From Histomonas meleagridis 2922-C6/04-290x (Eukaryota; Protista; Parabasalia), in NCBI GenBank assembly GCA_020184695.1, contig JAANOX010000263.1:1-28498 (forward strand): 28,498 nt of DNA. Reading direction: 5' to 3'. The translations under genes and the position numbers were made by a program. Positions 6,593 through 28,169 of this stretch are shown here, one piece after another. Every line of letters starts with the position of its first letter. The first letter of the stretch is position 1. Under the pieces are notes generated by a model that saw only the letters and a list, made by a program, of their open reading frames with translations, did not search any database and was not told the origin of the DNA.

Positions 6593-8449
6593 TCATAAAA
6601 GAATACAATTAGAATTTTTGTTCCGAAGTAAATTTACTATTTCTATATTATTATTTCTAACTGCTATATGAAGTGCTGTTTCAAATTATTAAAACATATT
6701 CTAAATTATTAAAACATATTCCAAATTATTAAAACATATATAAAATTATTCAAATGAATATTTTTTGCATTAACATCAATTCCTTCTTTATCTAAAAGTA
6801 ATTTTACTATTTCTATATTATTATTTCTAACTGCTATATGAAGTGCTGTTTCAAATTATTAAAACATATTCTAAATTATTAAAACATATTTCAAATTATT
6901 GAAAAATATTCTAAATTATTAAAATATATTCTAAATTATTAAAACATATATAAAATTATTAAAACATATTCTAAATTATTAAAACATATTCCAAATTATT
7001 AAAACATATATAAAATTATTCAAATGAATATTTTTTGCATTAACATCAATTCCTTCTTTATCTAAAAGTAATTTTACTATTTCTATATTATTATTTCTAA
7101 CTGCAATATGAAGTGCTGTTCCAAATTATTAAAACATATTCCAAATTATTAAAACATATATCAAATTATTAAAACATATTTTAAATTCTTCAAATGGATA
7201 ATTCTTGCATTAACATCAATTTCTTTTTGTTCTAAAACATATTTCACAAGTTCGATATTTCCTGATTCTGAAGCAAATGGCAAAATATCTTTTGGAATTT
7301 GATTATTTTGAAGGAAATATTTCACGAGATATAAATTCTCATTTCTTGCTGATACATTTATATCATCAGCATTAACATTAATTCCTATTTCAGACAAAAA
7401 TGCTAAAGTTTCATAATTATCTTTTTTAATACAAAAACTTATCAAATTATTAGTTTTATCTTCAGATATTTTTGGTATTGATTGTATTTTTTCTAATTTA
7501 TTCTCATAAATATATTTAAAGATATCATTTTGATGAAACATAATTGCTGCACAATATGCACCCCTAAATAATGAATGATTTTGTTCACATAAATGAATAA
7601 TTTCAAGATTTCCGCTTGCAACTGCATATTTACCTGTATTTTCGACATTTGCACCGTTCATAAGTAAATATTTAAAACATTTAACCGATCCAAAAAATGC
7701 TGAATAATCAATTAATGTAACATTTTCATGATTAATAAATGAACATCTTTCATAAAGTGATGGTTCAATTGTTTGATTAAAATTAAAATTTGCTTGTGAT
7801 GAAATTTCTTGAAGGTTTTCTATTTCATCTTTTCGAATTATTTTTGCAATTTCAATCGGATTATGTCCTTCTTTAACATATTTCTTATGAAGTTCCCAAT
7901 CATTCTTTGAAAGTTCATCATAATGATCCAAAAAGTATTTTTTAATTGGGTCATTTCCATTAGAGCCAAATGTCATGTGGGTTTGTTTTTGATTTCCTTC
8001 TTTTGTTTTATAATGAGCAAAATATTTTGAATTAATATTTTCAGTAATACTTTTATCAATTAAATTTTGTTCAATCATTTTCTCTATTAAATAATATGAT
8101 TCTTGTGTGCTCATTGTAGATATACGTTTTATAAAAATTGATATTAAATTAGTGATTTTTGATTAATTTCTTCTTCTTTTGTTTGAAGTGTTTTTAAAAA
8201 ATTTAAGTAAATATCATATTTATGTTTTGGTGATGAAAATGTATTATAAACTAATTTACTTATAATAATATTAAATGTTGGAAAATTTGTATCGAATAAT
8301 TCCAATACTTTTTTAACCGACACCTGGTAGTTTTCTTCGGTTAAACTGAATACAATTTTCTCAAGCTCAATTAGGAATTTCAAGCAGGTTGATAGATCGT
8401 TCAACTTTTTATCTCCTGTATTTATGGTGGTAGTATCATCATTCGGCAT
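6593..8449 (-). CDS. DUF3447-type ankyrin repeat protein (locus A); one homopolymer frameshift (~8158) and three spacer-interrupted C-terminal ankyrin junctions
   Basis: ORFs 8144-8449 and 7161-8114 join if A5 becomes A6 and then align with the 18.8 kb paralog. The motifs TLIDYSAFFGSVKCFKYLL, AVASGNLEIIHLCEQ and AIMFHQNDIFKYI are typical of trichomonad DUF3447-ankyrin proteins. Further ankyrin exons at 7122-7030, 6852-6760 and 6682-6593 (TALHIAVRNNNIEIVKLLLDKEGIDVNAKN), ending in TGA. Confidence 0.8.
6683..7199 (-). repeat. Ankyrin units separated by arrays of a 20-nt repeat (NNN + ATATGTTTTAATAATTT); spacers of 77, 177 and 77 nt
   Basis: Spacers 7199-7123, 7029-6853 and 6759-6683 each consist of one 17-mer plus 3, 8 and 3 copies of the 20-mer. 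Confidence 0.9.
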
Positions 8450-8805: not shown

Positions 8806-11104
8806 TTACATAACTGTAAGTAATGTCACTATTTTAGTGTGGCCATTTTCAGAAACATTAATTAAAATAAATCAATGCTTTTGGTATTGAATTTGATTTC
8901 TCTTCTTGCAAGAAGTAATTTAGCTATTTATGTGTTCCCTTTTTCAGAAGTTATCATAAATGCTGTTAAATTTATTTATGTATATTAAATTTTTTAGTTA
9001 AAACATTAAAAAAATAAAAATAAAGTATTTATCATTGATTAATACATGATTTTTATCAAGATAATATTTAATGATATAATATTGATTAGATTCACATGAA
9101 TGCATAAATGAAATTATATTTGTTATTAGGAAATTCCTTAAATTACGAAACAACATCAATACTTTAAAAATTACACAAAATTTTCCAAATTAATATCTTT
9201 CATATAAATATCTGCATCTTTTTTAATGAGAGATTTAACAATTTTTATGTAACCACATGAAGATGCAAACATAATTGTTAACCAAAATAAATTAAATAAT
9301 TTCCAAATATCAGATGAAAATATTTTATTCCTTAAATAAATTTCAAATTTCAATAATTTAAATCTTTAGAATTAATATGAAATTGTTTTCGCTCAAGAAT
9401 TAAACGTACAATATTTTCCAATCCTTTGTTTGATGCAATTCTAAGTGCCTCATCAAACATTTTTATTAAACCATAAATAAAAATCATAAACCCAAAAATC
9501 AATATTACTAACATTTGTATTAATTCCTTCTTTCGTAGTAAATTCAGCAAGTGCATCAATAAGTTCCCCATCATAAATTTCATCATATTCTTGTTCTATT
9601 TTATCTTGATCTGTAATTAAAGGTTTTCCATCATCTTGAATCGCATTTTTATATATAAAATCATTGTATTGAGGTTTTTCTAATCTTTCTGTTATTGTCG
9701 TATATTCAGCAAAATTTTCTATTATATGTTTTTCAACATCACGATTATCACATTTCGTTGGAGCTCCATGAAGTAATCTATGTGAAGCATTCATTTTAAC
9801 AGCTTTATTATTTTGGATACGATCAATTATTGATATATAATTATCTAATGAATGATTACTGATATATTTTATTGACAACATTTATGTTTATCTTAATCAA
9901 GTCAGATGAAGATTTACCATTTGCAACTACTTTAGACATCAAAACTGTTTCTTTTCGAATATTACTTTTTTAATATTGATCTTGAATGTATACTAATTGA
10001 TCTGGAATTTCATAATTATTAATCATAATTTTTAATAAATACCTGATATTGTATCTGTTAAAGTTTCAAATGAAATTTTTCCTATGCTTTTGATTAAGGA
10101 AATTCCAGCATTTTTAACTAAAATCCAAAAGAAATTTGAAATATTAACTCCAATCGTATGACCTTTAGATGCAACAATATCATCAGTATTACATACTGTA
10201 ATAATAAATTTTTCCTTTAAATTTTCATTTCTAATTCTTGTGGCTAATGCATTGCAAACACATAGAGGTGTTCCAATTGTAAATGCTTTAGCATTAATGT
10301 GATCATTAAAACGCAAAAGTGCTGCAGCTATGGCTGCAATCGCTCCTCCACCAGAGTATCCAAAAATATTATTTCTTTGAAGTATTTCTCTTTAAAAACT
10401 CCTTTGAAATGTGAAGTAATATCATCTGCAGCTTTGCTGTAGCCTTTATGCGCTGGACAGCCTTCAATGACTTGACATTCTTGATTTTGCCTGGAGATCA
10501 TGATATCTTTTACTGAAGTAAGATCAGTGCCTTTAATCCATATAAAAATGGATTCATTTCCCCGGAGATCTTTACACGTTACACACCGAAAAATAGGTGT
10601 TATTTGTTCGACTGTGGTTACATCATATTTTTCTGAAACATTAAATGTATATTGATTAGATATTGTAATAACATTACGGGAATCACCTAATATTTTTATT
10701 TTTTTTATATAGTATCATTAGTTCAAGTGAAGATATTGTAGTTGTTATTTTAGGTATTTTCATAGGAGACAGCTGCATTTGCCTGAATTTAATTCTTTTA
10801 TGGGTAATGGAAAAAATGCCAATCAAACATTTCTTAATTGAAACAAAACAGTTATTTAAGTCAAAAACAATCCTGGATTGAATGGATACAACTTTTTGAG
10901 AAATATATGACAGTTTTTGAATGATATGGAACATCATTATACTTATATGATGTTAATGATAAACCCAAAAATATGAAAAAATAAAGTTTGCGTATTCTGA
11001 AATTTTCTCGGAAATATTTAAACAATGGTTTGTACAAATAAAGATAAATATGAATAAAAAATGATTTTAAAGAAAGATACAAACGAAACAAGATTACAAC
11101 TCAT
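8806..11104 (-). pseudogene. Class 3 lipase fused to C-terminal spacer-interrupted ankyrin repeats (locus B); multiply disrupted
   Basis: Stitched frames give IWIKGT, AHKGY, nucleophile elbow GYSGGGAIA, FTIGTP, NTDDIVA and NHSLDNY (His). About five ankyrin repeats follow (EALRIASNKG, TIMFASSCG, SFMHSCESN, TAFMITSEKG, LINVSENGH). Several indels and in-frame TAAs; the 5' end (ATG 11104) is approximate. Confidence 0.7.
9118..9361 (-). other. Two 77-nt spacers (9361-9285, 9194-9118) with 17+3+17+3+17+3+17 register
   Basis: They decode to SKD-E-N-G-W and MKD-C-D-G-I, with GGA exactly at the third embedded codon. Confidence 0.75.
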
Positions 11105-11547: not shown

Positions 11548-12188
11548 ATGGTTGACCTAACATAAAAACCACTTGTAATTAAGGAAATTATTAAAATATC
11601 GCTTGTTGGTTATAACCCTGAGTATATGACTACATTTGCATGTATCTATTTTCAAGGAAACTTCCATGAATTTTGTAAAACAACAATCGGTGTAGACTTT
11701 GGAAGTAAGGAATATCCAATGGGCGACCAAATTCTTGTTGCTCAACTTTGGGATATTGCTGCTCAAGAACGATATGGAAATATGATTCATGTGTATTATC
11801 AAGAATCTGTTGGCGCAGTTATTGTTTTTTTGGTGCTAATCATCCAAATGAACTTGATTTTGTTGAATTGTGGAAAAAAGATATTGAAACAAAAGTATTC
11901 ACGTCAGAAGGTAAACCAATTCTTATACTTTTGGTAGGTTGTTTGAAAGGGGATGTAGATGAAAGATGGAAATCTATGGAAGAAAGATATCGGAAATATA
12001 GTGAAGAAAAAGGATTCATTGGATATTTCACAGTTAATCTCAACACAGGATCAAATGTTGAAGAATCTATTTCCTCACTTGTTAAGTATGTGTATGATAA
12101 TGGTATTCAGCCACAAACTACTGAATATGCAAGGGATCTGCAAGTGACTCCAAAGAATACGAAGCGGGAAGTATGTTATGTACAATAA
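11548..12188 (+). pseudogene. Second Rab32-like paralog, disrupted (in-frame TAA 11563-65, frameshift in T7 run 11825-31); CaaX-like CYVQ end
   Basis: MVDLT*KPLVIKEIIKISLVGYNPEYMT...KTTIGVDFG...WDIAAQERYGNM. ORFs 11626-11937 and 11748-12188 are two frames of one gene, co-linear with 5360-6016. Confidence 0.8.
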
Positions 12189-13914: not shown

Positions 13915-16900
13915 ATGAAAGAAGGACAAAATGAACAAACACTTACTAAAGAGCATCTTTTAGAATTTGTTTTAAAATCACTTGAAGGCAAAAATTCAAT
14001 TCTTGAAACTTATCCAATTTTATCTTCAAACTTTCCAGAGTATGAACCATCATATCTTTTCAATACTATTATACGACAACAATCATATGTTTTAATTTGT
14101 AATAATCGATTAAATGAAGCATCACGTCTTCTTGAAAGTATAGGAGAATCATCAACAGATTTTTTTTATAATATTTGGCGTCAAACGACACGTAATAATA
14201 CACGAGCAATTCTTTATGATTATCTTCATAAGCGTTCAATACTTACTACTAAAGATGAAGAACATCATCGAATTCTTTTAAAACTTACTACTACATATCC
14301 TAATACCTCATTTTTACGATCATTACAACTTAGTAAATCACCAGCTATTAAATTTCTTGAAAACACTCTTGAAGAAACGCCATATAAAACACTTGAAGAA
14401 CTTTCCAAACATTGTGATGGTTATAACATTACAATTTTTCCGGAACTTTTTCCTATTCCAGATGAACCAATTGTTAATTCGCCATTATATTTTGTTGGAA
14501 GTATTTCACTTATTGAAACACAACATCCGAAAATGCTGAAACTTTTACAAGGAAAAGGTTCACAAGTTGAACGTTATTGGCTTATGCATTGTCAGCATCA
14601 AGTTAATGAAATGACGCAATTATTTCAAGAAGAACTTAATTCTAAAAATAAATTATTACGTACACCTAAATTAAAATGTTTAAAATTTATAAATCTTTAT
14701 TATAAAGATTTAAATGAATATGAACGTGAAACATTTTTAAATTTATTATGTAACAATGGATATTTTTGTGAAGAAGAAATTAATAATTTTGAGTTATTAT
14801 TAATTCGAATTAGTAAAAATAAACATCTTTTTGAACAACAATGGTGGAATAAAAGTACACTTTCATTTTCTAATTTCTTTAAAGAATATTCCAAATATTG
14901 TGGCGAGAAAAAACTTTTTCTTCCATATGAAATGTTTATTCTTTCACATCCGAAAAGTAAAGATATTAATATTAAAGATGTTTCAGATCCGATGATTCAA
15001 TTTATATGGAATTTATGGGTCAAACGCGATATCTCATTAGCGTCACAGTCATGTATGGAAATGTTAACTAATAAAAAAATTAATCAAAATAATTTGATCG
15101 AAATATGGAATAATCTTCCGAAAGATTCATTAGCGCCTTTAGCTTCATTAATATGGAATAAAGATCCAACACTTTTTAAACCTAATTCTAAAGAAATTAA
15201 TGAATTATCAGAACATTTCAAAGATAATTATCCTCTTCTTTCTACATTAATTAAAGGAGAAATTCCACATCCGACAACTAAAGTAATTGACCCACCACAA
15301 AGTAAATGGCGTTCACCAATTTATACATCGAAATTTGACTTAGAAGTCCATGATTTGATTGAAACGCATTTTGAACAATTCGATTTTAATAAAATATTTA
15401 CTAAATATTATGGACAAACATTAAATCAGCCACCATATCCACACTTCGATCATCCAGAGTTAATTAATTCTAAACATGAAGCGCCATATTTTTATTATAT
15501 TAAATCATTATTACCAATTAGTGCATTTCAACAAGCGAATGAAGATAATATTAATGAAAATGAATTTAAAGAAATTTGTAACAAATGTATTACAGAATCA
15601 TTTCAAAATGTTCAAATTCGTTTATCAGTTTTAACATTTATTGAATTATTTGATATTAAATTTAACAAAGATTCATCGATTGATTACAAATTAATTATAA
15701 CAATTTATGATAACTTAAATAATAACAATAACAATAATAATAACAATAACGAAATTATAAATGAACTTTTAAAGATTTATAATGATAAAAATCAAAATAG
15801 TGTTAAAGTAATTCAAAATAAATTTAATGCGGAAAACATTGAACAATTTTTATTAATTACATTATTACGATATCGTTGCAAACTTTCTATTGATTATTCG
15901 CCGATTGTTTACTTTGCGCAACAAAATCGACCAGCGGAAATTCTTTTATTCATTGATCGAAGCAAAGAAATTGGGGTTTTTTATAATAACAATGAAATCT
16001 CAGATATTATCACAAAAGAAATGCCGAATAATCCACTTAAAGATCATCTTTTGTATTATCTTACGCAGAAATTACCGAAATATGAAAAAGAAAATGACGA
16101 AATAACGAATAATGAAAAAGAAGAACCCGCATTAATTATATATAATGCGATTCATCAAAATAAAGAATCGAAATATATTTTATTATTAAAAGAAGCACTT
16201 AAACGGAAAAACAAATTATATTCCATCATTGCATATTCGATTGAAGGATCGAATTCGATAATTTGTTCATTAGTTACACTTATTACAATATCAGAAACAT
16301 TTCAAGTTCAATTTGAAGAAATAAATTTCAACAATCCGAAAGAAAACGTTAAATTATTATTAGAAATCTTTTTAGAATTATTATTAAAACATAAATCAGA
16401 AGAAGTATATAAAACATTAGAAATATTTAGTGAAACGTCAATTTTAACAAATATTTCTAATTGGTATCATTCAGTTGAAATATTTGCATTTAAACAGAAT
16501 TACGTGTAAAACTTGTTGAAGTTATTGAAACGTTTGATGACTTTCGTCAAAGTATTATCAACACAGATTTACTTGGAAGTTATGAACGAATTGTTACAGA
16601 CTTAACATTACATCATTCATTATTACTTGGACAAAAGGCATCGAAATGTTTTGGCATTTCTACATCATTAGTTACCGATGAATATCTTAAATATCAATAT
16701 ACGACAGTTAATACTATTGACGAATTACTTAAAGTTCATAATAAGATCACGAAAACTATACAAAACATTGATCCATATTTTTATATTTCGATGTTTGGAT
16801 TATTACTTTCGTATACACAGCCAATGAATTTAATTGAAATATTAAAATTTTCACTTAAATATTTCAAAGATAATGAAGACAATGAAATCCAAAATAATGT

Positions 16901-18613
16901 TAAATCATTAATAAATCATTTAGAAATATGTGACAAATTTCATAAAGAAGTTCCTGAAGATCGAAACAATAAAATTCAACTTAATAACATCTTAAAAATA
17001 TTATTTCCAACGATATCAAATATTAATGAAATTAAACGCGAAATTACATTTAATATTAAAACTCCAATTTTATATTCAGAAGAATCAATTCAACGATTTC
17101 TTGAGTCTACGATTGACTTAAGTATAAATTATTGTTCAGACCATTTACGAATTACAGATGCGCGAAATCTTTGTAAATGGCGAAATCGAAATTCGCGAAA
17201 TATAATAATTCTAGAGACATTACAAAATATATTTAATGATATGAAACTTACAGACGAACAAACAGAAATTGTTAAAGAATATGGAACAATTGATGACATC
17301 GAAGGACTTTTATCTGAAATATCGAAAGGAAAAGAAAAACGATTTAAAATTATTTATTTAATATATAAAATATCGAATAAATTAAAATGGAACAAAAATG
17401 AAATATTAACTAAAAAGTTATTGATATCCTTAAAAATGAAATTATATTCCAACGAGAAAATTGGGGAATAATCAAAGAAATTCTTCAATTAAGTGATTTA
17501 AGTATCAAAGAAAGCACCGCAGCAATTGTCGAAACATTTATTATTAAAACGCCGAATTTATTAACAGAAGAATTCCAAGAAACATTCATTGAATTTAGTA
17601 ACTTAAGTGGCGATCAAGAAACATTTGGTGAAATATTATTTAATAAGACGCGAAAGATGAAACATGACGAAGAAAACATATCGAATGTTATAAACAATTA
17701 TCTTCATTCATCGATATGCACCATGAAAAACATTGATGGATGTTCAGAGATATTAAATAATTATTATAATATATTAACGAAAGATAATAACAATTTCGAA
17801 CTTATTCATAAAATGATAATAATATTTCCGAAGCCAGAACTATTAATTAAATATATCCAATATATAATAATGAATAATCAAATCGATTTATTAATACAAG
17901 AAAACAATTTAACAAAAGACATTTGTCATTTGATAATAAATTGTTATCGACACATGCGCCAAATTTGCGAACCACAAAAATTGTTTGACTTAACACTTAA
18001 ATTTCATCTTTATCGCGCGCACGGTGAATTACAAATGGAATATGCCGATTCGCTGTTAAGCAATAACACGAACAAAGCGCAGCTTCAAGAAGCGTCGAAA
18101 CATTATTTACTTTCGCTTTCGTATTTCTTACATGAGAAATGTTATAGTCTTTCGATGCGATGTCTGAAGAAACTTTCGCTTATATCACTTCAAGAAGTGA
18201 ATGAAAATAATTTAATAAATCTTCAGCAGAAAGAAGTCTTCGATTTGATGTGTACAAACGATTTTTCATGTTCAGTTATACTTGGAATTGCATATGATAT
18301 GGACAACGAAGAAATTTGGGGAAAAGTAATATTCAGACAATGCATCATGAACGGCAACGAAGAGTTTCTGAGTAACTTCCAATTGTTTAAGCCAATTACG
18401 TCGAATTTATGTATATCAGTTGCAAAGGAATATCAAAAAGAACAAAACAAAGAAATCGCAAAAGAAAAAATGAAACAATTTTTGTTGAATATATCAAATT
18501 TGATCGAAAGATATAAAATTGCAAAAGAATTACATTTTAATGATATCATAGAAACAATGAAATCGACATATCCGGTGGTATGCGAATGGTGTGAAAAAAT
18601 ATTGGAATATTAA
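13915..18613 (+). CDS. SPG11: Spatacsin (SPG11) homolog, about 1566 aa, split by two 1-nt deficits (~16492, ~17465)
   Basis: The three ORFs (13915-16509, 16791-17471, 17657-18613) join into one frame with two single-base additions, and the gaps are open in the downstream frame. The C-terminal region (LSYFLHEKCYSLSMRCLKKLSLISLQ; WGKVIFRQCIMNGNEEFLSNF) resembles the spatacsin C-terminal domain. Confidence 0.75.
15718..15750 (+). repeat. AAT/AAC microsatellite encoding poly-Asn (11 residues)
   Basis: aat aat aac aat aac aat aat aat aac aat aac, in frame in the SPG11-like ORF. Confidence 0.9.
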
Positions 18614-18839
18614 AAATGAATTTGTATTTTATTTTGTTTTTTTGAAATATTTTCGTTTTATTTTCAAATCGTTTCTATTAACGTTAAATGTTTATATTGC
18701 AAAATGTAAATATAATACTGATGATTAAATATTTTTTGTTAGAGTAATTTTAGGGCACCTGTAAAAGAACTTTTTTATTTTTGTTGTAAAGTATTTAAAT
18801 GTAATTTAGATTTCAAAAGAAACAAAGGATCACAACCAA

Positions 18840-19968
18840 ATGATAACTACTTCCTATTTGATCTTAAAAAATGAATGTTTAGAAAATCGATTTTTCATGG
18901 AACTCCTTTTAAAGTTAGAGAAAATTATCTTTATTTTAAAAGAAGAAAATTTTAATTTAATAGTTGAACAAACAATGAAATTATTTGATTGCATATTCAT
19001 TATGAAATTTCATTATAAGCAAATTGATTTATTTTGTATTTTTATCACAAAAGAATCTGGACAATATATATTATAAATATTTAGAAACAATTCAAACAAA
19101 AGAAGAAGAAATTAACAAAAATATTCAAAAAAAAATTATTGAAATTTTTACTAACATTTTGGTTGATATTAATTCACAAGAATCATTTTATATAATTGAG
19201 AAAATGATTATTCTAAATTTAATTAATAAAAGTATCATAAACAAATTTAATAATATTTTCTACAGAATCAAAAAATTCAGAACTTGTTAAATTTATATTA
19301 GAACAAAAAGGAACTGATATTAATGCTAAAAATATAAAATTTATTTTAATAATTTTATATTTCAAAATAATATTTGGAAATTATTTAAATTATTTGATAC
19401 AGCACTTATGATTGCATCTTCAAATGGTTATACAAAAATAGTTAAATTACTTCTTGAACAAGAAGGAATTGATATTAATGCTAAAGATATTTATTTGTTT
19501 TATTTAATATTTATTTTAATAATTTGGTAATTCAAAATAAGATTTGGAAATTATTTAAATTATTTAGAACAGCACTTATTTTAGCATCTCAAAATGGTCA
19601 TACAGAAATAGTTAAATTACTTCTTGAACAAGAAGGAATTGATGTTAATGCTAAAAATATTTATTTGTTTTATTTGATATTTATTTTAATAATTTCTTAT
19701 TTCAAAATAATATTTGGAAATTATTTAAATTATTTGATACAGCACTTATTTTAGCATCTTGGAATGGTCATACAAAAATAGTTAAATTACTTGTTGAACA
19801 AAACGGAATTGATATTAATGCTAAAGATATTTATTTGTTTTGTTTATAATTTATTTTAATAATTTTGGATTTCAAAACAAGATTTGGAAATTATTTAAGT
19901 TATTTCATACAGCACTTATTTCAGCATCTGAAAAAGGTTATACAGAAATAGTTAAATTATTTAAATAA
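18840..19968 (+). pseudogene. Internally deleted paralog of locus A (locus C): N-terminal domain joined directly to five spacer-interrupted ankyrin repeats
   Basis: The N-terminus (ELLLKLEKIIF..., QTKEEEINK..., QESFYIIEKM) aligns with 8449-8050, then jumps at ~19250 to FSTESKNSELVKFILEQKGTDINAKN. Ankyrin exons at 19396-19488, 19566-19658, 19736-19828 and 19906-19968 (TAA). Confidence 0.75.
19396..19905 (+). repeat. 170-bp tandem repeat (93-nt ankyrin exon + 77-nt spacer), three full units plus flanking partial units
   Basis: agcactt recurs at 19401, 19571, 19741 and 19911 (period 170). Confidence 0.95.
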
Positions 19969-20033
19969 AATTATAAAAAACTTTTAGAGGTAAATTTTAA
20001 AAGTGAATGTAATTATTCATTAACATTACCAAA

Positions 20034-21956
20034 TCAAAACGGATCAATTACTGAAAACGGATCTTTCGGCTGCTTCGCATCTGCTTCTTTTGCATTTCTT
20101 TGTTGGCTTGAGCCGAACATATTATATACGTTGCCATTATTTGCATCATTTCCTATCATATCAAACAAACCATTGTTTTGTTGCTGTTGTTTGCCATTAT
20201 CGAACACATCGAATAATTCGTTGTTTTGTTTTTGTGAATTTCCGTTATTAAACACATCGAATAATTCATTGTTTTGTTGCTGCTGCTGCTGCTGTTTTGG
20301 TTGTGATGTATTACTGCCGCTAAACATATCGAATAAGTCATTGTTTTGTTGCTGTGGCTGCGAAGAAGTTGGACGCTGTTGAGGTGGCGCATTGCCAAAG
20401 ATATCAAACAAGTCTTCGTTTTGCTGCTGTTGCTGCTGTGGCTTTGTTGCTTCATTATCTAAAATGTCGAATAAGTTGTTATTGTTATTTTGTTGCTGTT
20501 GCTGTTGAGAATTTGTTTTCTCATTGCCGAGAATATCAAACAAGTCATCGCTTTGTTGCGGTGGAACATTTTCTTTTGCGCTTTCATTGTCTAACATATC
20601 AAATAAGTCATTGTTTTGCTGTGAATTTGTGTTTGCGTTATCATTAGAAAAGATGTCTTTGGGTTGCTGTGGTTGAGCAGATTCGGAAATTGGCGTTTGT
20701 GAATCATCAATTACTCCGTCGTTACCAAGCATATCAAACAAGCCGCCGGTGCTGTTTGACGGATTTTGTGGTCGCGGCTGTGGAGGTGATTTCTGTGGTG
20801 GTTCTTGTGGTAGTTCATCATCATCAAATATAGATGTACTGTCAAGCATACCAAATGCGTCTTTTTGTGGAGGCCTTTTGTGTGGTTCATTTTGTCCATG
20901 ACGTTGTGGGGCATTTTGGATAGAAGTTGAAGTATATGGTTGATATGTTGGATTTGCTGGTTTTTCACTTTGACCTCCATAATGCTGTTGGATGTTGCTT
21001 GCAACTGAGGAGGCCTTCTCTTTGATGAAATTGGCGGTTTTGTTGAAGAATGATTTAAACTTATCTTTAGCATTTCTGATAGAAAAGTGATCATGGTCTT
21101 CAGTGTGTTGTTGGTGCTCTGGAAAGTAATCTGAGTCCTGATCTAGTCCTTCAAATGGGTCATATTGTTCTTCTGAGTTTCCGATTTCAGGGGTGCTCTG
21201 CTTTTGAACGTTTATTTCCGGAGGTTGTTTTTGAGTGAAAATTGGGTTCTCTCTTTGGGTGTTCCGAATAATTTGCGATGGATCAATATATAAGAAAGGA
21301 TTATTAATCTTCTCTGGTTTTGGTGTAGGTGTTGTTATTTCAATAGGATCACATAATTCATATGTTGAATCTCCAAATATGTTATTTTCTTCTTGAGCAG
21401 AAAATCCTCCAATAAGGTCTTCATTGCTACCATTAGAATTTGTTGGAAATCCGAATATATCTTGATTATTATTTTGATTGTTTGTAGATTGATAATCAAT
21501 CATATTGGGTGAATTAGCTTGGTCATTTTGTGTATGTTCTACTTTCCTCTTCCTTCTTTTACGACGTTCAGGTAGATGTGGTGGTTGCATTGAATGGTCA
21601 ACCCATTTTTCTTGTTCATACTTTTGACGAATAAACTTAGTCATATTTGTAACATCAGTTGATGAAGGTCTTTGGAAATCAGGTGGAAGAAGTGCCTCCC
21701 AATAAGCATTTGCTTTAGCATTACCAACTCTTTCCATCATCGCAGCTTCTTCTTCTTTCCATGTATCAAGTGTACATGAACGAACGAATGAAATATGCGT
21801 TCCTAAAGAACGGTGAATACCGCTGCAATTGATACAAATGAAAATTCCTAGTTTTGAAGAAGCCCATCTTGGATCTTTTGCACCACAGTCTGCACAACGT
21901 TGATTTTCTGGGAGGTTCATCAATGCTGTTACACGGCTCTTATAATCCACAGACAT
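20034..21956 (-). CDS. ArfGAP-domain protein (SMAP/AGFG-like) with low-complexity C-terminal tail, 640 aa
   Basis: Zn-finger CADC-x16-CINC with [12 protein letters not shown] and LDTW. The tail has NPF, DPF and repeated DLFD motifs. ATG 21956 (MSVDYK) follows an Inr-like TCATA; an upstream in-frame ATG (MSEEFW) is an alternative start. Confidence 0.92.
20100..20830 (-). repeat. Degenerate coding repeats: (Q)n-N-N-[DE/G]-L-F-D-[MIV]-[LF] motifs
   Basis: About ten LFD units separated by poly-Q/N linkers in the ArfGAP tail. Confidence 0.8.
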
Positions 21957-22206
21957 TTTGAATATGACCAGATAACCATTCAAAACGCAGTACGTTAAAA
22001 TTAACGTTTCCCAGAACTCTTCGCTCATATTAAAATACAGTAAATAAAATTGAAAAACAGAAGAAAACATCAAATGTTTCAATGGTTCACATCTTAATAT
22101 CTTTTGGAGAATATCACAATAATTTTAATGAAAAACACATAAACATTAATTAACATTTTATTTTGTTACAAAAGTCTGTTATTAATAAGAATAATAATAA
22201 TAATAA

Positions 22207-23535
22207 TTAAAATCCATTTTCTTCATATTCTTCTTCTTCTTCATATTCATAAGCATATTCGATCTCTTCCACCAACGATTGTATTGGTCCTCCATATCTT
22301 CTCTCCATTACATTTGATATTGGAATGTGCACCTCTATCAGGTACTTATCCCATATTTCGTTACTTTCGATCATTTTAGCTTCGATCATTACATTTATTA
22401 ATGAAGTTAACTTGTGAAGATGTCCCCAATAGTTCGCTTGTATTTCATATCGACGATGGAATTCCATTGCAATGATGTTCATAATGTTTGTCTCTTGTAT
22501 GAACATTGAATATTCACTTAAAACTGATAATTCTTCAAATAAATATACAAATGAATTATGAAGAAATGTATTGAATGGAAATTCGAAAAATATTTTGAGT
22601 AAAAATACAAAAATATTTGCAATGAGATCCGAAAAATTCGGAATGTTTTTGATTAAATGGCATATGATTAAAATTAAATAATAATGTGATGATTCAAATT
22701 TTTCACTATTTACTATAAAATCATGAAAAACTTGTAAATGGTTTAACAAATTAACGACAAATGTCGACGTAACTTGTGAACATTGGGTAATCTTATGAAT
22801 ATACTTGAAACATAACTCATGAAAAAGATTAAATTCAAACGAGATACGTAATACAGAATTGATAAATACGTCTTTGGAATAAAATAATAAGTACGGAACA
22901 TCAAATTTGAATAAATCAATCAACGAATATGAAAATTGTAATACTCGTTTGAGGACAATTTCATTGGGAGTTTGAAGATGTGTAACAAGAATTGAAAAAG
23001 AATCAAAACGAACGAGAAATCCTTTCAATTCTTTTGGATATTGTGTAATGGTATAAAATAATTCATCACATATCATCCTGTCTGATAGTGTAAATATGTT
23101 CTTGAATATGATTTCAGAGTTTGCTTGATTAAATTTCTTTAAGATTTTGCCTTTGGTACGTTCAATAAAATGAATAAGAAGTTTAATCGAATTCTCAACA
23201 AAATGAGGATTGACTGTATTCGTGGTAAGGAATTCAATAATTTCTAGAAAAAACTGAAAACGATTATCAATTGAACGAAATATCATTTCTGGTAATTCAA
23301 GGAGTAAAAATAGACTTTCATCATTAAGAGTATGTTGATTTATGGATGTCTTACCTATTGCACAATTAATTAAATCAAGGTAATGGTTATAAACAAAATA
23401 TAATAAATTTGGAAGTTTTTGTCTTATAGCTATAATTGAATTTGGGTTTAATAGTAGTTCATCTAGAGTTAATTTCCCGTTTAAAGCGCTTTGATCTAAA
23501 GCCCTATAGAACTTTAAGCGATCCAAAAGAGACAT
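22207..23535 (-). CDS. SIT4/PP6 phosphatase-associated (SAPS)-like protein, 442 aa
   Basis: N-terminal TLDELL...LLYF, FPFNTFLHN, YWGHLHKL, a conserved-type W near the end and an acidic tail resemble the SAPS pattern. The ORF track starts at TTG 23544; the first ATG is at 23535. Confidence 0.6.
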   Translation of the reverse strand: MSLLDRLKFYRALDQSALNGKLTLDELLLNPNSIIAIRQKLPNLLYFVYNHYLDLINCAIGKTSINQHTLNDESLFLLLELPEMIFRSIDNRFQFFLEIIEFLTTNTVNPHFVENSIKLLIHFIERTKGKILKKFNQANSEIIFKNIFTLSDRMICDELFYTITQYPKELKGFLVRFDSFSILVTHLQTPNEIVLKRVLQFSYSLIDLFKFDVPYLLFYSKDVFINSVLRISFEFNLFHELCFKYIHKITQCSQVTSTFVVNLLNHLQVFHDFIVNSEKFESSHYYLILIICHLIKNIPNFSDLIANIFVFLLKIFFEFPFNTFLHNSFVYLFEELSVLSEYSMFIQETNIMNIIAMEFHRRYEIQANYWGHLHKLTSLINVMIEAKMIESNEIWDKYLIEVHIPISNVMERRYGGPIQSLVEEIEYAYEYEEEEEYEENGF

Positions 23536-23888
23536 TTTTGTCAAAAATTTTCCTGAGAATTAACTGGGCGGTTAAAAAGTGTCCGTTGTTTCCAATTATT
23601 CAGAGGAAAAAGAATGTGGTAACTTAACGTGCAGCTATTTTTCAAATGCAAATATCTTATCAACTACATGATATTTTCAAGACTTTTTGTGTCTTTTATG
23701 TTACCATAAAATTTTAAATATTTTTTAATTATTTGTTTTACAATTCACATCAGTTAATTTTCAGTATCATCAAATGAAAAAAAATAGTGAGTTAATTTAC
23801 CTGAAAAAAAAGTGTACAGTATTTGAATAGTTTACCCGATCGTCATTTGGCGCCGAAATTCACTAGCTATGTTTGACTTCAGTCAACA

Positions 23889-25535
23889 ATGGGAGGTATC
23901 TTTTCCAAACCAGTTGAAGAGCAACCACATGTTTTAGCAGCTCCTATAAAGCAACCAAAACCAAGTCAAGAAAGAGGAGAAAGAAACTATGAGCGCCCTA
24001 AGCCAAAAGAAAAGGAACCACCTAAAATCAATAGACGCTTCATCCCAGAAACTATTGAAGATCCAAGTCCTGGTGATCCTTGTGGCCTTTATATGGAAGG
24101 CCTAAATTATCATTGGGATCGTGAAAAGTTTGAAAAATTCCTTGTTAAAGAAGGCATATCATTTTTACGCACCTCAAAGAAGAAGAGCCAATATCAAGGA
24201 AGCATTATTTTTGATAATAATGCAGATCGCAAAAAAGCATATGAGCATCTTTCTCAAAATCTTTTTGCAAATCGACAACTCTTTATTGTTCCACTTAAAA
24301 AGAACCACCGTGTCACCGAAATGTTATGTCATCGTCTTCGTGCACGTGCCACATCAGATCTTGAAACACGTTCAATTGATGATCGCGTTGCTCCATGGCA
24401 TCACATGTCATATAGCGATCAAATCGCGCACAAGTCCGCCAAATTCAGCAAGATCATTGAGCCCATTACTCCACCCAACTCACCGCTTATGACAGTCTTT
24501 CCAGCGCCTAAAACAAGTGCATATCGTAACAATGTCGAACTCACAGTTGGCTATGATCTTAATGGCAACATCTGTGTTGGCTTTAATTTAGGTTCACGAG
24601 TTGAAGATGTTGTTGCACCACTTACATCATGTTATAACGTACCCAAAATTGCGCCACATTTAGCCGAAGAACTTCGCAAATTTATCATCGAAACTAAAAC
24701 GCCTGTTTTCGATCGATGTCTTAACACAGGCTATTGGAAGTTTGTGCTTATTCGCACAACAGAGACAGGGCAATCGATGATGTCCACATGTATCTTTGGA
24801 AAACTTGACGAACAAATAATCAAAAAATACATCGAACGTTTTGCGCCACAAGTCACATCGTTATACATTGCAGAGACTAATGCATACGAAGGATATGGAA
24901 AGGATCCAAACTTTAGATTATTATCCGGACCGGCAACAATTGAAGAACATTTACGTGGACTTCAATTCGATATATCGCCGATGTCATTTTTCCAAACGAA
25001 TACATCTGGAGCAGAAGTGTTGTTCTCTAAGATCGAAGAACAAGCAGAAGTCGATGAGAACACAATTTTGGTCGACGTATGTTGTGGAACAGGTGTAATA
25101 GGACTTGCAATGGCTCACAAAGTAAAGAGAGTCATTGGCGTAGACATAGAAGAACAAGCGATTCAAGACGCAATAAGAAATGCGCAGAAGAATAACATAA
25201 ATAACGCAGAGTTCATTGCTGGTAAAGCAGAAGATACATTGAACGAAATATTACAAAGATATGCCGAAGAAGGTGCGAAAATTGTTTGCATCGTGGACCC
25301 ACCGCGCGCTGGATTACATAAGAAAGCCGCTTATGCACTGAGGGATTGCGAATACGTAAGAAGAATAGTATACGTAAGCTGTAACCCGGAGTCATTAGTT
25401 AGAGATTCACAGACAATTTTGATGAATCCAAATACAGGAAAAGGCACAAAACCATTTTCACCAAGAAATTGGTTCGGTGTTGATATGTTCCCTCATACAG
25501 ACAGAGTGGAATTAGTAATGCTAATGACGCGCTAA
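23889..25535 (+). CDS. TRM2: tRNA (uracil-5-)-methyltransferase, TrmA/TRM2/TRMT2A family, with N-terminal RRM-like region
   Basis: YRNNVELTVG, SPMSFFQTN, SAM-binding DVCCGTGVIG, VDPPRAGL, catalytic YVSCNP and DMFPHTDRVE motifs. Confidence 0.93.
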   Translation: MGGIFSKPVEEQPHVLAAPIKQPKPSQERGERNYERPKPKEKEPPKINRRFIPETIEDPSPGDPCGLYMEGLNYHWDREKFEKFLVKEGISFLRTSKKKSQYQGSIIFDNNADRKKAYEHLSQNLFANRQLFIVPLKKNHRVTEMLCHRLRARATSDLETRSIDDRVAPWHHMSYSDQIAHKSAKFSKIIEPITPPNSPLMTVFPAPKTSAYRNNVELTVGYDLNGNICVGFNLGSRVEDVVAPLTSCYNVPKIAPHLAEELRKFIIETKTPVFDRCLNTGYWKFVLIRTTETGQSMMSTCIFGKLDEQIIKKYIERFAPQVTSLYIAETNAYEGYGKDPNFRLLSGPATIEEHLRGLQFDISPMSFFQTNTSGAEVLFSKIEEQAEVDENTILVDVCCGTGVIGLAMAHKVKRVIGVDIEEQAIQDAIRNAQKNNINNAEFIAGKAEDTLNEILQRYAEEGAKIVCIVDPPRAGLHKKAAYALRDCEYVRRIVYVSCNPESLVRDSQTILMNPNTGKGTKPFSPRNWFGVDMFPHTDRVELVMLMTR

Positions 25536-25714
25536 AAGTGATTATAAACACATTTTCTAATCATAAATTATCTTTCGTCATAAACTGTTTCAAGTATTCA
25601 AATCCAAACCAACAAAAACGATAACCAATTGAATTTTGTGTTGGCGGTAAAAAAAACTCACAAAAAGTCGAACACAAAGTTGCCAGCAGCAGTTTTTAGG
25701 TGAAATTGAAGTAC

Positions 25715-27046
25715 TCAAAGGTTGTCAAGAAGACGATCACCTGTATCGCAGGTAAAGTTAGTGAAAGCGTCCTGCGTGTCCTGATCGATCAAGCTGCTAT
25801 CGACGTATGAATTGCCTGGAGCTTCTCCAGTAAATTCTTCATCGAAACATGAAACATCAGTTGCATCTGAAATTGGTGGCACCCATTCAGGTTCATATTT
25901 CTTGTCGTAGACTGCCTTCCAATCTAAGGATGAGAAGAAAGGATGTGCTTTGACATCTTCGACATCTCTTTCGCTACTACCTAATCTAGTCTCAACATTA
26001 CGATCAAGAAGCTTAGAAATGAAGTCAGTGGCATCTGCTGACATCGATGATGGGAAATCAATGTTATCATTAAGGATCGCACGATACATTGAATTGACAT
26101 TCTCATCATAAAATGGTGGAAGGCCAGTCAACATTTCGAAGATTAAGACTCCAAAGCTCCACCAATCAACTGCTTTTGTATATGATTGTCTCTGAAGCAT
26201 TTCTGGTGCAAGATATTCTGGTGTTCCGCAGAAGGTTGTTGTTGTGTTGTCACCGGCGACTTCTTTTGCAAGACCAAAATCAGTTATTCTGATATGTCCT
26301 TGCATATCAATAAGAATGTTTTCGGGTTTGAGATCACGATAAATAACACCCATGGAGTGAAGGTGACCAATGGCAAGTGCAATTTCGGCGGCATAGAGAC
26401 GAACACGTGATTCTGAAAATGTGGTTTCATCTTTAAGTCGGCCAAACAATTCTCCACCAGGAACATAGTCAAGAATCATGTAAAGCTTGGCTTGTGTTTG
26501 GAACGCATAGTGTGCACCAACTAAGAATGGATGACGACATCTCAATAAAATACTTCTTTCAGTAATGATTTGATCAAGTTGGTCGTTTTCGGCAAGTACA
26601 CGCTTGCTCATTGACTTCATTGCAAAGAGTTGGCCGGTTGACTTAAGTCTGACTAATTGAACTTTACCATATGTGCCACGACCAAGAACTCTCAATATGT
26701 CAAAATCTTCTACAGTCATCTTCTTTTCTTCTTTCCTTTCTACGGTCTTGCCAGATTTGATGTCGTTAAGAATTTCAACCCATTCGTTTACCAATTTTGG
26801 TGTATCTGTGACCAAATAATAGACTTTACCAGAGCCTGCATCTATCTTGAATGCTGGTTGTTTTTTACACTCTGGTGCTGCTTCAATGCTGACTAAAGAA
26901 GGGATATTAAATTTTCCTTGTTCAGCGGCACCTGGCTTCCTATAATAAATAAGGTCCTGTCCGATGATCCGGAAGTAGCGACGACCCCATTTAGTGTGTT
27001 TTCCAGGTTTTTGCTTGTTTAACCATCCGTCTTTGATTGAGCTCAT
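25715..27046 (-). CDS. PH-domain AGC Ser/Thr kinase (PKB/Akt-like), 443 aa
   Basis: N-terminal PH domain (KDGWLNK...RRYF...W). Kinase motifs GRGTYGKV, AMK, YRDLKPEN, DFG and TFCGTPEYLAPE; AGC C-tail with hydrophobic motif FTNFT. First ATG is at 27046. Confidence 0.95.
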   Translation of the reverse strand: MSSIKDGWLNKQKPGKHTKWGRRYFRIIGQDLIYYRKPGAAEQGKFNIPSLVSIEAAPECKKQPAFKIDAGSGKVYYLVTDTPKLVNEWVEILNDIKSGKTVERKEEKKMTVEDFDILRVLGRGTYGKVQLVRLKSTGQLFAMKSMSKRVLAENDQLDQIITERSILLRCRHPFLVGAHYAFQTQAKLYMILDYVPGGELFGRLKDETTFSESRVRLYAAEIALAIGHLHSMGVIYRDLKPENILIDMQGHIRITDFGLAKEVAGDNTTTTFCGTPEYLAPEMLQRQSYTKAVDWWSFGVLIFEMLTGLPPFYDENVNSMYRAILNDNIDFPSSMSADATDFISKLLDRNVETRLGSSERDVEDVKAHPFFSSLDWKAVYDKKYEPEWVPPISDATDVSCFDEEFTGEAPGNSYVDSSLIDQDTQDAFTNFTCDTGDRLLDNL

Positions 27047-27233
27047 TCTGCTTTGTAACAAATCTAACGGTTATTTTGAATGAATTATTGTTCTTTTCAG
27101 AAGGAACGTTTATTAACTCACAAATAATATGTAAACATTTGAAATTTTGGAATTTTTATAAACTTAAAAAAAAGCTAGAAAAAATAAACTATACAAATAA
27201 AAAAGTTGGAGGCAAACACTGAGTGAAACTCTT

Positions 27234-28169
27234 ATGTGCATATTTCTTTTGCCATGTTTCACTTTGGCATGTGATTTCAACTTGAATGCAGATACACAAC
27301 CAGTTATGTTTGGATTAGATCTTAAAGTTAGTCAATGTATCTCAATATCTATTAAAAACAACTCATATTTCCATATGTTTTCAAGTAATGATACTCTCTC
27401 CGTAGAGAGATTTTTTGTACATGAAAAACCTCTGCGTTTTGACTTAGATTATAAAGCTACTATCCCTGATACGGCAATAGGTGACGATGTATTCGACGCT
27501 CCAGCACAATATACATTTACTGCATTACGTCCAGTATATTTTTCAGTGTCATATGGAATTCTTGCACCTTTTGATTGTCAAAAAGTTATTATTGATAACT
27601 ATAATCCCTGGGATATAAAAATCACTAACGAACAAAACATAACAGAAAGAACCTGTTTTTTTGCAGCTGCACCAGCTCAACAAAAAATCACTGGTGAATT
27701 AAAGAATTGTAAGTTATGTCCACAAATCGACATTTATGATGGTGCAATAGAACAACCCATATCACATTTATCTGAGCCTACAAATGTTTCTATTCAATCA
27801 ATTCAATCAAGGCCATTAATTATTGTTATATCTCCAAATTACGATAATTCAGGAAATATTAATTCACCAGGATTTGACCTTAGCCTTCATATATCCGCAG
27901 ACACCAAGTTCGAGTACGCCCCGCATCACCTCGAATACTCATTTAAAAACTTAACGGTCGTTTCGCCCATCACCCATAAACAACGCGAAACAACAATCTT
28001 GATCATCATCGGAATTTCCATTATGATATTGTTATGTTTTATATTAATTGGGAAGATTTCATATAATGAATGCTTGTGTAGAGCAATAGAAGAGAATCAA
28101 ACGATAAATGACTCGTTGCTGTATTCCATTCCGAATTACACTCAAAACACGAACTCTCAGCAAAATTAA
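27234..28169 (+). CDS. Hypothetical single-pass membrane protein (signal-like N-terminus, C-terminal TM helix)
   Basis: 311-aa ORF; hydrophobic N-terminus MCIFLLPCFTLAC and TM segment TILIIIGISIMILLCFILIG; no recognisable family. Confidence 0.65.
   Translation: MCIFLLPCFTLACDFNLNADTQPVMFGLDLKVSQCISISIKNNSYFHMFSSNDTLSVERFFVHEKPLRFDLDYKATIPDTAIGDDVFDAPAQYTFTALRPVYFSVSYGILAPFDCQKVIIDNYNPWDIKITNEQNITERTCFFAAAPAQQKITGELKNCKLCPQIDIYDGAIEQPISHLSEPTNVSIQSIQSRPLIIVISPNYDNSGNINSPGFDLSLHISADTKFEYAPHHLEYSFKNLTVVSPITHKQRETTILIIIGISIMILLCFILIGKISYNECLCRAIEENQTINDSLLYSIPNYTQNTNSQQN

What the first reader, a model, noticed from the sequence alone, without database searches (positions are those of the whole stretch)
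19336..19908. Embedded codons are hypervariable while their 17-nt flanks are nearly invariant, at ankyrin binding-surface positions
Seen: between spacers 2 and 3 the four 17-mers differ at 2 of 68 nt, while the three non-Gly codons differ at 6 of 9 nt. Between spacers 3 and 4 the figures are 4 of 68 and 7 of 9. Codon sets are AAA/AAT/GAT/ATA, TAT/GGT/CTT/TGG, invariant GGA, and GAT/AGA/GAT/CAT. The residue after 'AS' in helix 1 also varies (S/Q/W/E). Established: these hairpin x positions and the helix-1 position are the target-contact residues randomised in designed ankyrin (DARPin) libraries. Inference: a natural diversified binder repertoire in which the spacers may isolate or target individual codons for diversification (mutation, gene conversion or optional codon skipping).
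Basis: partly seen in the sequence, partly recalled or inferred. Interest (0 to 1): 0.8.

Follow-up and report, generated by a model that had tools for sequence, protein, structure and literature searches.

The report
17-nt inserts isolating ankyrin hairpin codons
In the poultry parasite Histomonas meleagridis, the tip of each ankyrin-repeat hairpin is written as single codons separated by exactly 17-base T-rich inserts that fit no known intron type, so these genes can make full proteins only if an undescribed kind of very short insert is removed.

Summary
Window 19489-19908 holds three 80-nt hairpin spacers, each 4 x (17 nt + 3 nt). The 17-mers differ at 2-4 of 68 nt. The non-Gly triplets differ at 6-7 of 9 nt (Fisher p about 5e-6).

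The window is Histomonas meleagridis. The same layout occurs in two more ankyrin genes in the window, in other Histomonas loci and in metagenome contigs of relatives. Twenty-nine hairpins align without a single gap.

The inserts share a consensus RTTTRTTT...ATTT. They start AT, GT or GC, end TT and never end AG. No parabasalid branch motif or conserved RNA fold was found.

The embedded triplets behave as real codons:
- They fit the ankyrin K/N-D/N-G-x pattern.
- Gly is present in 24 of 29, using three synonymous codons.
- None of 116 is a stop, against about 7 expected.

An intact gene keeps 21 open exons and regular spacers. A transposon-killed neighbour has decayed.

Best reading: 17-nt intervening elements, most likely non-canonical ultra-short introns, flank single-codon microexons. 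Removal from RNA is not shown.

Both strain assemblies are identical here, and the variable positions are the usual ankyrin surface positions. The excess codon divergence over silent sites remains unexplained.

The parts
18894..19336 (+). Remnant N-terminal region and first ankyrin repeat of gene 1, a truncated member of the DUF3447-ankyrin family
   Evidence: tblastn with family protein P0002: residues 12-50, 46-125 and 384-414 match in three different frames, and residues about 126-383 (the DUF3447 core) have no counterpart.
19334..19398 (+). Hairpin 1: 5-nt lead ATAAA plus three 17+3 units (triplets TAT, GGA, GAT). The first element is absent and the frame is off by one.
19399..19488 (+). 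Ankyrin exon body 1 (30 codons, T-A-L ... N-A-K-D)
19489..19568 (+). Hairpin 2: four 17-nt elements (19489-19505, 19509-19525, 19529-19545, 19549-19565), each followed by one codon (AAT, GGT, GGA, AGA)
19569..19658 (+). Ankyrin exon body 2
19659..19738 (+). Hairpin 3: four 17-nt elements with codons GAT, CTT, GGA, GAT
19739..19828 (+). Ankyrin exon body 3
19829..19908 (+). Hairpin 4: four 17-nt elements with codons ATA, TGG, GGA, CAT
19909..19968 (+). Last, short ankyrin exon, ending in TAA
6593..8449 (-). Gene 2: DUF3447-ankyrin gene with one frame break near 8150-8165, followed by an ankyrin array that carries the same kind of elements
   Evidence: Pfam DUF3447 and Ank matches; tblastn; sequence
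7120..7199 (-). Gene 2 hairpin with four 17+3 units (codons AAA, GAT, GGA, GGA). Elements 2-4 are the identical 17-mer ATATGTTTTAATAATTT.
6850..7029 (-). Gene 2 hairpin expanded to nine 17+3 units, with near-identical 17-mers and codons TAT GGA AGA TAT AGA AGA GAA AGA GAA
   Evidence: Tandem Repeats Finder periods 20 and 60; sequence
6680..6759 (-). Gene 2 hairpin with four 17+3 units (TAT, GGA, AGA, GAA). It is a recent duplicate of the first three and the last units of the nine-unit hairpin.
9282..9361 (-). Gene 3 hairpin with four 17+3 units (GAA, AAT, GGA, TGG). The gene belongs to a different family (weak Lipase_3 N-terminus plus ankyrin repeats, about 10340-8830, partly decayed).
   Evidence: sequence; exon HMM hits; weak Lipase_3 match

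Best explanation
The region is the ankyrin array of a truncated DUF3447-family gene of Histomonas meleagridis.

In this family, and in at least one other ankyrin gene family of the same genome, the beta-hairpin between repeats is written as up to four single codons. Each codon is preceded by a 17-nt, T-rich intervening element with consensus 5'-RTTTRTTT...ATTT-3'.

The exon bodies of successive repeats lie in different genomic frames. They join into 34-residue ankyrin repeats only if the elements are taken out.

I propose that the elements are excised from the transcript as ultra-short, phase-0, non-GT-AG introns. That would leave the triplets as 3-nt microexons.

New units appear to arise by tandem duplication of a 20-nt unit (element plus codon). 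Each such step adds or removes one hairpin residue without breaking the frame.

The contrast between variable codons and constant flanks in this window has two components. The repeats were homogenised recently, so the flanks and the silent exon sites differ by only a few per cent. The hairpin and helix-1 surface residues have diversified at the protein level.

Shown: the layout, its quantised lengths, its spread across genes and species, the coding character of the triplets, and the contrast between an intact gene and a dead one.

Inferred: removal at the RNA level, the machinery that does it, and the cause of the codon divergence.
For: 1. Layout and counts.

2. The same 17+3 layout occurs elsewhere.
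- Gene 2 and gene 3 of the window.
- Histomonas loci L003 and L007.
- Metagenome contigs L001, L002, L004 and L006 from related organisms.

3. Spacer lengths between exon models are quantised.
- 29 spacers are exactly 89 nt, which corresponds to four elements.
- The others fall at 72, 55 and 35 nt (three, two and one element) and at 18-24 nt (none).
- 25 of the 89-nt hairpins align in 89 columns with no gap, although the 17-mers are about 38% divergent on average.

4. The triplets look like translated codons.
- Position 1 is mostly K or N.
- Position 2 is mostly D, N or Y.
- Position 3 is Gly in 24 of 29 (GGA 20, GGG 2, GGT 2).
- Position 4 is free.
- There are 0 stops in 116 triplets, against 6.6% among triplets inside the elements (P = 3.6e-4) and about 7 expected from the triplets' own column composition.

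5. Where an element is absent, its two neighbouring codons are simply adjacent.

6. Selection maintains the layout.
- L007 gene B has an intact 475-residue N-terminal ORF, 21 exons without a stop, and 18 of 20 regular spacers.
- L007 gene A is cut by a transposon. It has stops in 3 of 18 exons and only 9 of 17 regular spacers.

7. The element 5' ends use AT (49%), GT (32%) and GC, the three dinucleotides known for splice donors (from my own knowledge). Positions 1-6 read RTTTRT, which resembles a degenerate GTATGT donor.
Against: - No element ends in AG; 83% end in TT.
- The Trichomonas-type branch/acceptor motif ACTAACACACAG is absent from the window and from all fetched loci.
- No transcript or protein that reads across a hairpin was found. 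Every predicted family protein stops in the first interrupted hairpin or reads a 63-nt hairpin straight through.
- Gene 1 itself is truncated and has frame problems, so this copy may be dead.
- From my own knowledge, a 3-nt exon between two 17-nt introns would be sterically awkward for a spliceosome and would need sequential removal.
- The nine-unit hairpin in gene 2 looks like plain minisatellite growth.
- In about 70 kb of Histomonas DNA, the elements were seen only in ankyrin hairpins, unlike a general intron class.
Confidence: 0.5

Rival explanations
1. The arrays are dead and carry a minisatellite. The proteins end at the first interrupted hairpin. The downstream repeats are decaying relics in which a 20-nt T-rich tandem repeat has expanded, and nothing is ever removed.
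For: - All gene calls stop at the first hairpin.
- Gene 1 is truncated and frame-broken.
- Gene 2 has a nine-unit expansion of near-identical 20-mers.
- The elements have no canonical splice signals.
- No product reading across a hairpin was found.
Against: - Each element is exactly 17 nt in 29 hairpins from several organisms, with no indel despite about 38% sequence divergence and long T runs.
- None of 116 embedded triplets is a stop, and Gly is kept with synonymous variation.
- The 21 exons of gene B are all open and its spacers are regular, whereas the transposon-killed gene A shows what decay looks like.
Confidence: 0.2
2. The hairpin is removed in larger pieces. The whole 80-nt spacer, or blocks of 37 or 57 nt, is removed as one intervening sequence, or the microexons are included optionally. 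On this reading some or all embedded triplets are not part of the main protein.
For: Removing any block of elements together with the triplets between them restores the frame just as well, so frame alone cannot tell these schemes apart (arithmetic).
Against: - The embedded triplets follow the ankyrin hairpin consensus and avoid stops. That is unexplained if they are never translated.
- In hairpins with fewer elements, the same codons are contiguous with the exon.
- Larger blocks have no GT...AG ends either.
Confidence: 0.12
3. The 17-mers are cis elements that direct mutation or codon-scale gene conversion to the single codon between them, producing a diversified binder repertoire.
For: - Non-Gly triplets differ at 6-7 of 9 nt, while flanks and silent exon sites differ by 3-8%.
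- All 12 fourfold-degenerate exon sites are identical among the three repeats (sequences).
- Ordinary conversion tracts should not skip single codons.
Against: - The two strain assemblies show no substitution across the array.
- The recent duplicates in gene 2 share their codons.
- The triplets show no base-specific mutation signature.
- The equally variable helix-1 codon 8 has no 17-mer flanks.
- No reverse transcriptase or deaminase domain appeared among the ten large window ORFs scanned.
Confidence: 0.08
4. Translational recoding. Ribosomes bypass or frameshift across each 17-nt element.
For: - 17 = 18 - 1.
- The elements are U-rich and look slippery.
Against: - About 6.6% of triplets inside the elements are stops, and several lie in frame.
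- There are no matching take-off and landing codons.
- There is no conserved RNA structure.
- Four events per repeat, and about 70 per gene, would leave almost no full-length product (my own reasoning).
Confidence: 0.03

Closest known systems
Ultra-short spliceosomal introns: Stentor coeruleus 15-16 nt, Bigelowiella natans nucleomorph 18-21 nt, Trichomonas type B 23-25 nt (the last described in PMC12316389)
   Same: Very small size with a nearly fixed length, U-rich interior, and sequences that interrupt coding regions and must be removed for the frame to be read.
   Different: Those introns all have GT...AG ends, and in Trichomonas a CTAAC branch motif. They are spread over many genes, usually one per gene in parabasalids. 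The elements here end in TT, start with A about as often as with G, and come four per hairpin and tens per gene. They were seen only in ankyrin hairpins.
3-nt microexons of animals and plants
   Same: A single codon forms an exon, and including or skipping it keeps the frame.
   Different: Known microexons sit between long introns and need dedicated enhancers. Here the flanking sequences are 17 nt, and up to four microexons are chained.
Non-conventional introns of euglenids
   Same: They lack GT-AG borders and are presumably removed from the RNA.
   Different: Those introns are longer, and their ends are brought together by base pairing. No conserved pairing exists here.
TA-bounded internal eliminated sequences of ciliates
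   Same: Short AT-rich inserts that break reading frames.
   Different: Those elements are removed from somatic DNA, are 26 nt or longer in Paramecium, and are flanked by a TA repeat. Here only some first elements happen to have TA at both junctions, and parabasalids are not known to have a separate somatic genome.
Surface-position variability of ankyrin repeats (natural families and designed ankyrin libraries)
   Same: The variable positions are the hairpin x-x-G-x residues and the two residues before the G-H of helix 1.
   Different: In other families these codons are ordinary parts of one exon.

Membership tests
U2-type spliceosomal intron (parabasalid form) | GT (or GC) at the 5' end and AG at the 3' end | tested here: not met
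   Of 116 elements, 37 start GT, 57 start AT and 5 start GC. 96 end in TT and none ends in AG.
U2-type spliceosomal intron (parabasalid form) | Branch/acceptor motif ACTAAC...AG near the 3' end (PMC12316389) | tested here: not met
   The column profile of the elements shows no such motif. ACTAACACACAG is absent from all loci and gives only chance-level 2-mismatch hits in the window.
U2-type spliceosomal intron (parabasalid form) | Absent from mature mRNA | not testable with these tools
   No transcript data were available. Protein databases hold only unspliced gene calls.
U12-type intron | 5' RTATCCTT and branch TCCTTAAC | tested here: not met
   A purine at +1 is shared, but positions 2-8 read TTTRTTT and there is no TCCTTAAC. 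The U12 consensus is from my own knowledge.
Genome-wide ultra-short intron class (Stentor or nucleomorph type) | Fixed very small length | tested here: met
   Each element is 17 nt in 29 gap-free hairpins.
Genome-wide ultra-short intron class (Stentor or nucleomorph type) | Present in many unrelated genes | tested here: not met
   A position-weight-matrix scan of about 70 kb of Histomonas DNA gave no convincing case outside ankyrin hairpins. Neighbouring genes are long uninterrupted ORFs.
Ciliate-type TA-bounded eliminated sequence | TA direct repeat at both junctions | tested here: not met
   Junction columns: the base after elements 2-4 is not A as a rule, and the base before element 4 is A.
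Structure-defined RNA excision (bulge-helix-bulge, IRE1-type, euglenid non-conventional) | Conserved base pairing that presents the cut sites | tested here: not met
   RNAalifold predicts 0 pairs on 25 hairpins. The single-sequence fold has a z-score of 0.17.
Translational bypass element (T4 gene 60, yeast mitochondrial byps) | Matching take-off and landing codons, plus a stop or hairpin at take-off | tested here: not met
   The codon before an element and the last triplet of that element (mostly TTT) do not match. There is no structure.
Ankyrin repeat (Pfam Ank clan) | 33-34-residue repeat with T-x-L-x-x-A...G-H...V-x-L-L...N and a D-x-x-G-x hairpin | tested here: met
   Pfam Ank matches in gene 2. 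A family exon HMM finds 71 exon bodies. The embedded triplets supply K/N-D/N-G-x.
DUF3447-ankyrin family of parabasalids | N-terminal region with a DUF3447 domain before the ankyrin array | tested here: inconclusive
   Gene 2 and L007 gene B have it. Gene 1, the gene in the finding, keeps only the flanks of that region and lacks the DUF3447 core.
Targeted hypermutation systems (diversity-generating retroelements, deaminase-driven) | Template copy plus reverse transcriptase or deaminase, a base-specific mutation spectrum, and variation between clones | tested here: not met
   No such domain was found in ten window ORFs. There is no base bias in the triplets. The two strain assemblies are identical. 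Only 28 kb was searched for enzymes.
Minisatellite | Head-to-tail copies with variable copy number | tested here: met
   Period-20 arrays with 4 and 9 copies in gene 2 and 0-4 elements per hairpin in L003 and L007. This describes how units multiply, not what they do.

The most novel reading that the evidence does not exclude
The 17-mers are the cis part of a dedicated, non-spliceosomal excision system that works at the scale of single codons. Each hairpin residue would then be its own cassette. A cassette could be included, skipped, duplicated (20-nt steps) or exchanged between repeats and paralogues, using the conserved 17-mers as homology arms. A protist would thereby gain a combinatorial repertoire of ankyrin binding loops. 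This reading would also account for the codon divergence, which is roughly 15- to 30-fold above silent sites in a freshly homogenised array.
Probability: 0.12. Interest if true: 0.95.

Novelty: new variant of a known kind. Interest (0 to 1): 0.8.

Why it matters
If the 17-nt elements are removed from RNA, they would be among the shortest intervening sequences known. They would be the first found in series around single-codon exons, and they lack the GT-AG and branch signals that define splicing in parabasalids. That would mean either a very relaxed spliceosome or a new excision activity.

It would also change the annotation of Histomonas and its relatives. Genes now annotated as 400-550-residue proteins would in fact carry up to 20 more ankyrin repeats, in one case with about 70 such elements. 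The reported intron scarcity of the genome (PMC8529796) would then be a large undercount.

The 20-nt unit (element plus codon) offers a simple route by which loop length can change one residue at a time without frameshifts.

The question can be tested directly with existing or easily made cDNA data.

Tried and rejected
- One GT...AG intron per hairpin. It works on paper for spacer 2 only (71 nt). Spacers 3 and 4 have no AG before the T-A-L codons.
- Reading the spacers through. In-frame stops follow within a few codons, and successive exon bodies lie in different frames.
- Alternative genetic code. The neighbouring genes are long standard-code ORFs.
- TA-bounded excision, U12-type signals and bypass codon pairs. 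None fits the column profile.
- Conserved RNA structure. None was found.
- Search for products reading across hairpins. Two word-based protein searches and one exhaustive HMMER search found only unspliced calls.
- JGI metagenome scan with a 21-nt pattern spanning element 3, GGA and element 4. It returned 50 loci, all chance matches; none holds a family exon.
- Position-weight-matrix scan for elements outside ankyrin arrays, with an ORF-extension test. The test is not discriminating in this AT-rich DNA, and no convincing case emerged.
- Frame breaks in other window genes as possible 17-nt elements. They are 1-nt differences in homopolymer runs and one missing 205-nt segment relative to the other strain's assembly, so they are most likely assembly errors.
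- Literature. No paper in the library describes such elements in parabasalids.
- Structure prediction of the joined repeats was not attempted.

Full report
**What the window is.** The window is a 28,498-nt contig of Histomonas meleagridis, assembly GCA_020184695.1, record JAANOX010000263.1. Its genes are eukaryotic and parabasalid-like: ArfGAP, a PH-domain kinase, Pumilio, the spatacsin C-terminus and DUF3447 plus ankyrin. The nearest named relatives are Histomonas, Tritrichomonas and Trichomonas proteins. Most genes are long uninterrupted ORFs in the standard code. This fits the published description of an AT-rich, intron-poor genome (PMC8529796).

**The observation.** Tandem Repeats Finder reports a 170-nt period over 19335-19959. 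Each unit has a 90-nt exon body (T-A-L ... N-A-K-D/N) and an 80-nt spacer. Spacers 19489-19568, 19659-19738 and 19829-19908 each parse as four 17-mers, each followed by a triplet.

- The 17-mers differ at 2, 4 and 4 of 68 nt.
- The non-Gly triplets differ at 6, 7 and 7 of 9 nt.
- The third triplet is always GGA.
- The exon bodies differ at 9 of 90 nt.

Fisher tests give p between 4e-6 and 9e-6. Spacer 1 (19334-19398) is irregular: a 5-nt lead and three units only.

**The layout is a family trait.**
- A second gene on the minus strand (8449-6593; DUF3447 and Ank) has hairpins of four, nine and four 17+3 units, built from almost identical 17-mers.
- A third gene of another family (weak Lipase_3 N-terminus, about 10340-8830, minus strand) has the same four-unit hairpin at 9361-9282.
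- Other Histomonas loci (L003, L007) and metagenome contigs from related organisms (L001, L002, L004, L006) show it as well, with strongly diverged 17-mers.

With a family exon HMM I collected 71 exon bodies and the spacers between them. Twenty-nine spacers are exactly 89 nt: two codons, 4 x (17+3), and the T codon. The others cluster at 72, 55 and 35 nt and at 18-24 nt, which corresponds to three, two, one or no element. Twenty-five of the 89-nt hairpins align over 89 columns without one gap. This holds although the mean pairwise difference of the 17-mers is 38% and they are full of T runs.

**Anatomy of the element.**
- The column profile gives R-T-T-T-R-T-T-T, a variable middle, then A-T-T-T.
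- The four positions in a hairpin have slightly different consensus sequences. Element 3 is often TTCAAAAT..ATTT, followed by GGA.
- Same-position elements from different loci are a little more alike (p 0.32-0.42) than different-position ones (0.35-0.52). This fits an origin by duplication of one 20-nt unit.
- First dinucleotides are AT 49%, GT 32%, then GC and AA. Last dinucleotides are TT 83%. None is AG.
- The Trichomonas branch/acceptor motif is absent.
- There is no conserved RNA pairing.

**The triplets are codons.**
- Across 29 hairpins, position 1 is K, N, S, Y, R or D; position 2 is D, N, S, G or Y; position 4 is free.
- Position 3 is Gly in 24 cases (GGA 20, GGG 2, GGT 2).
- This matches the ankyrin turn D-x-x-G-x-T.
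- None of 116 triplets is a stop. Triplets inside the 17-mers are stops 6.6% of the time (P = 3.6e-4), and the triplets' own column composition predicts about 7 stops.
- Where an element is missing, its neighbouring codons are simply adjacent. One example is D-N-M-[17]-G-[17]-S-T-A-L in L003. Another is the single-element hairpins G-K-I-[17]-R-N-A-L in L007.

**Selection keeps the layout.** L007 holds a natural control.
- Gene A is cut by a transposon insertion. Its array has stops in 3 of 18 exon bodies, and only 9 of 17 spacers have a regular length.
- Gene B has an intact 475-residue N-terminal ORF. Its array has 21 open exon bodies, and 18 of 20 spacers are regular.

Taken together, the exon bodies and the triplets appear to be translated, so the 17-mers have to be removed. 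Frame alone cannot show that they are removed one by one, because removing any block of elements with the triplets between them also restores the frame. The coding character of the triplets is what argues for one-by-one removal.

**How it most likely works.** I commit to excision from the transcript as ultra-short, phase-0 introns with non-canonical ends (confidence 0.5).

In favour:
- The 5' end uses the three known donor dinucleotides and resembles a degenerate GTATGT.
- The interior is U-rich.
- The length is fixed, as in other very short intron classes.

Against:
- There is no AG and no branch motif.
- There is no transcript evidence.
- The elements are restricted to ankyrin hairpins in the 70 kb examined.
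- Splicing 3-nt exons between 17-nt introns would be physically difficult.

A non-spliceosomal activity is therefore a live possibility.

**Rivals.** They are dead arrays with a minisatellite (0.2), removal in larger blocks or optional microexons (0.12), targeted diversification (0.08) and translational recoding (0.03).

**The variable-codon question.** Within gene 1, silent exon divergence is pS 0.025-0.076 and 17-mer divergence is 0.03-0.06. These agree, so the repeats were homogenised recently and the 17-mers are not specially protected. pN is 0.11-0.12. The changes fall on the hairpin and on helix-1 positions that are also the most variable across 63 family exons (positions 7 and 8). This is the usual ankyrin surface pattern.

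- The other strain's assembly (L009) has no substitution over window 16496-28498, which includes the array.
- The recent duplicates in gene 2 share their codons.

One thing stays unexplained. Four codons per repeat are saturated with changes, while the fourfold-degenerate sites and the flanks are almost identical. That is a rate excess of roughly 15- to 30-fold. Neither ordinary gene conversion nor ordinary positive selection explains it comfortably.

**Comparison with what is known.** The closest kinds are:
- the fixed-length very short introns of Stentor and the Bigelowiella nucleomorph, and the 23-25-nt type B introns of Trichomonas (PMC12316389);
- animal 3-nt microexons;
- euglenid non-conventional introns.

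The elements fail the defining tests of each: termini, branch motif, structure and genome-wide spread. I file them as a new variant of very short intervening sequences, not as a member of any of these families. No paper in the searchable library describes them.

**Verdict.** The main result is a previously undescribed, fixed-length 17-nt intervening element that isolates single codons in Histomonas-lineage ankyrin genes. Interest is 0.8. The decisive test is cDNA.

Noticed in passing
window 16495/16496, 15982, 16975, 17417, 17981, 28496: Relative to the other H. meleagridis assembly (L009), the window lacks a 205-nt segment at 16495/16496. It also differs by single bases in A or T runs. These differences break the large spatacsin-like gene (about 13.5-18.6 kb) into several ORFs in the window. 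They are most likely assembly errors of this strain's assembly.
   Followed up: yes
window about 11626-12188: A Rab-like GTPase ORF changes frame inside a run of seven T. This is probably another homopolymer error, but the other assembly was not fetched for this part.
   Followed up: partly
window 6850-7029 (minus strand): One hairpin of gene 2 has grown to nine 17+3 units with near-identical 17-mers (periods 20 and 60). This shows that the 20-nt unit is still multiplying.
   Followed up: partly
window about 10340-8830 (minus strand): A gene with a weak class-3 lipase match followed by ankyrin repeats carries the same hairpin elements. One exon body contains a stop codon, so the copy is probably decaying.
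   Followed up: partly
L007 11210-12300: The Histomonas gene encoding P0012 is cut by an insertion that carries a 249-residue transposase-like ORF. By eye it has a GDESWF motif of mariner type, but it has no Pfam match. The ankyrin array downstream has begun to decay.
   Followed up: partly
L011 4220-4850 (Tritrichomonas foetus MLAK01000907.1): In T. foetus, the annotated DUF3447-ankyrin protein also stops in a hairpin. Further ankyrin exon bodies follow, separated by T-rich stretches of 138, 255 and 55 nt without GT...AG ends and without a clean 17+3 register. The phenomenon may be older and more varied than the Histomonas form.
   Followed up: partly
window 20034-22082 (minus strand): An ArfGAP protein has a long Q/N-rich tail containing repeated E-L-F-D-x-F-like motifs.
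   Followed up: no
P0158, P0168: In some relatives, a three-element hairpin (63 nt) is open in frame. Gene callers read it through as a 21-residue F/I/Y-rich insert inside an ankyrin repeat. Such database proteins probably contain untranslated element sequence.
   Followed up: no
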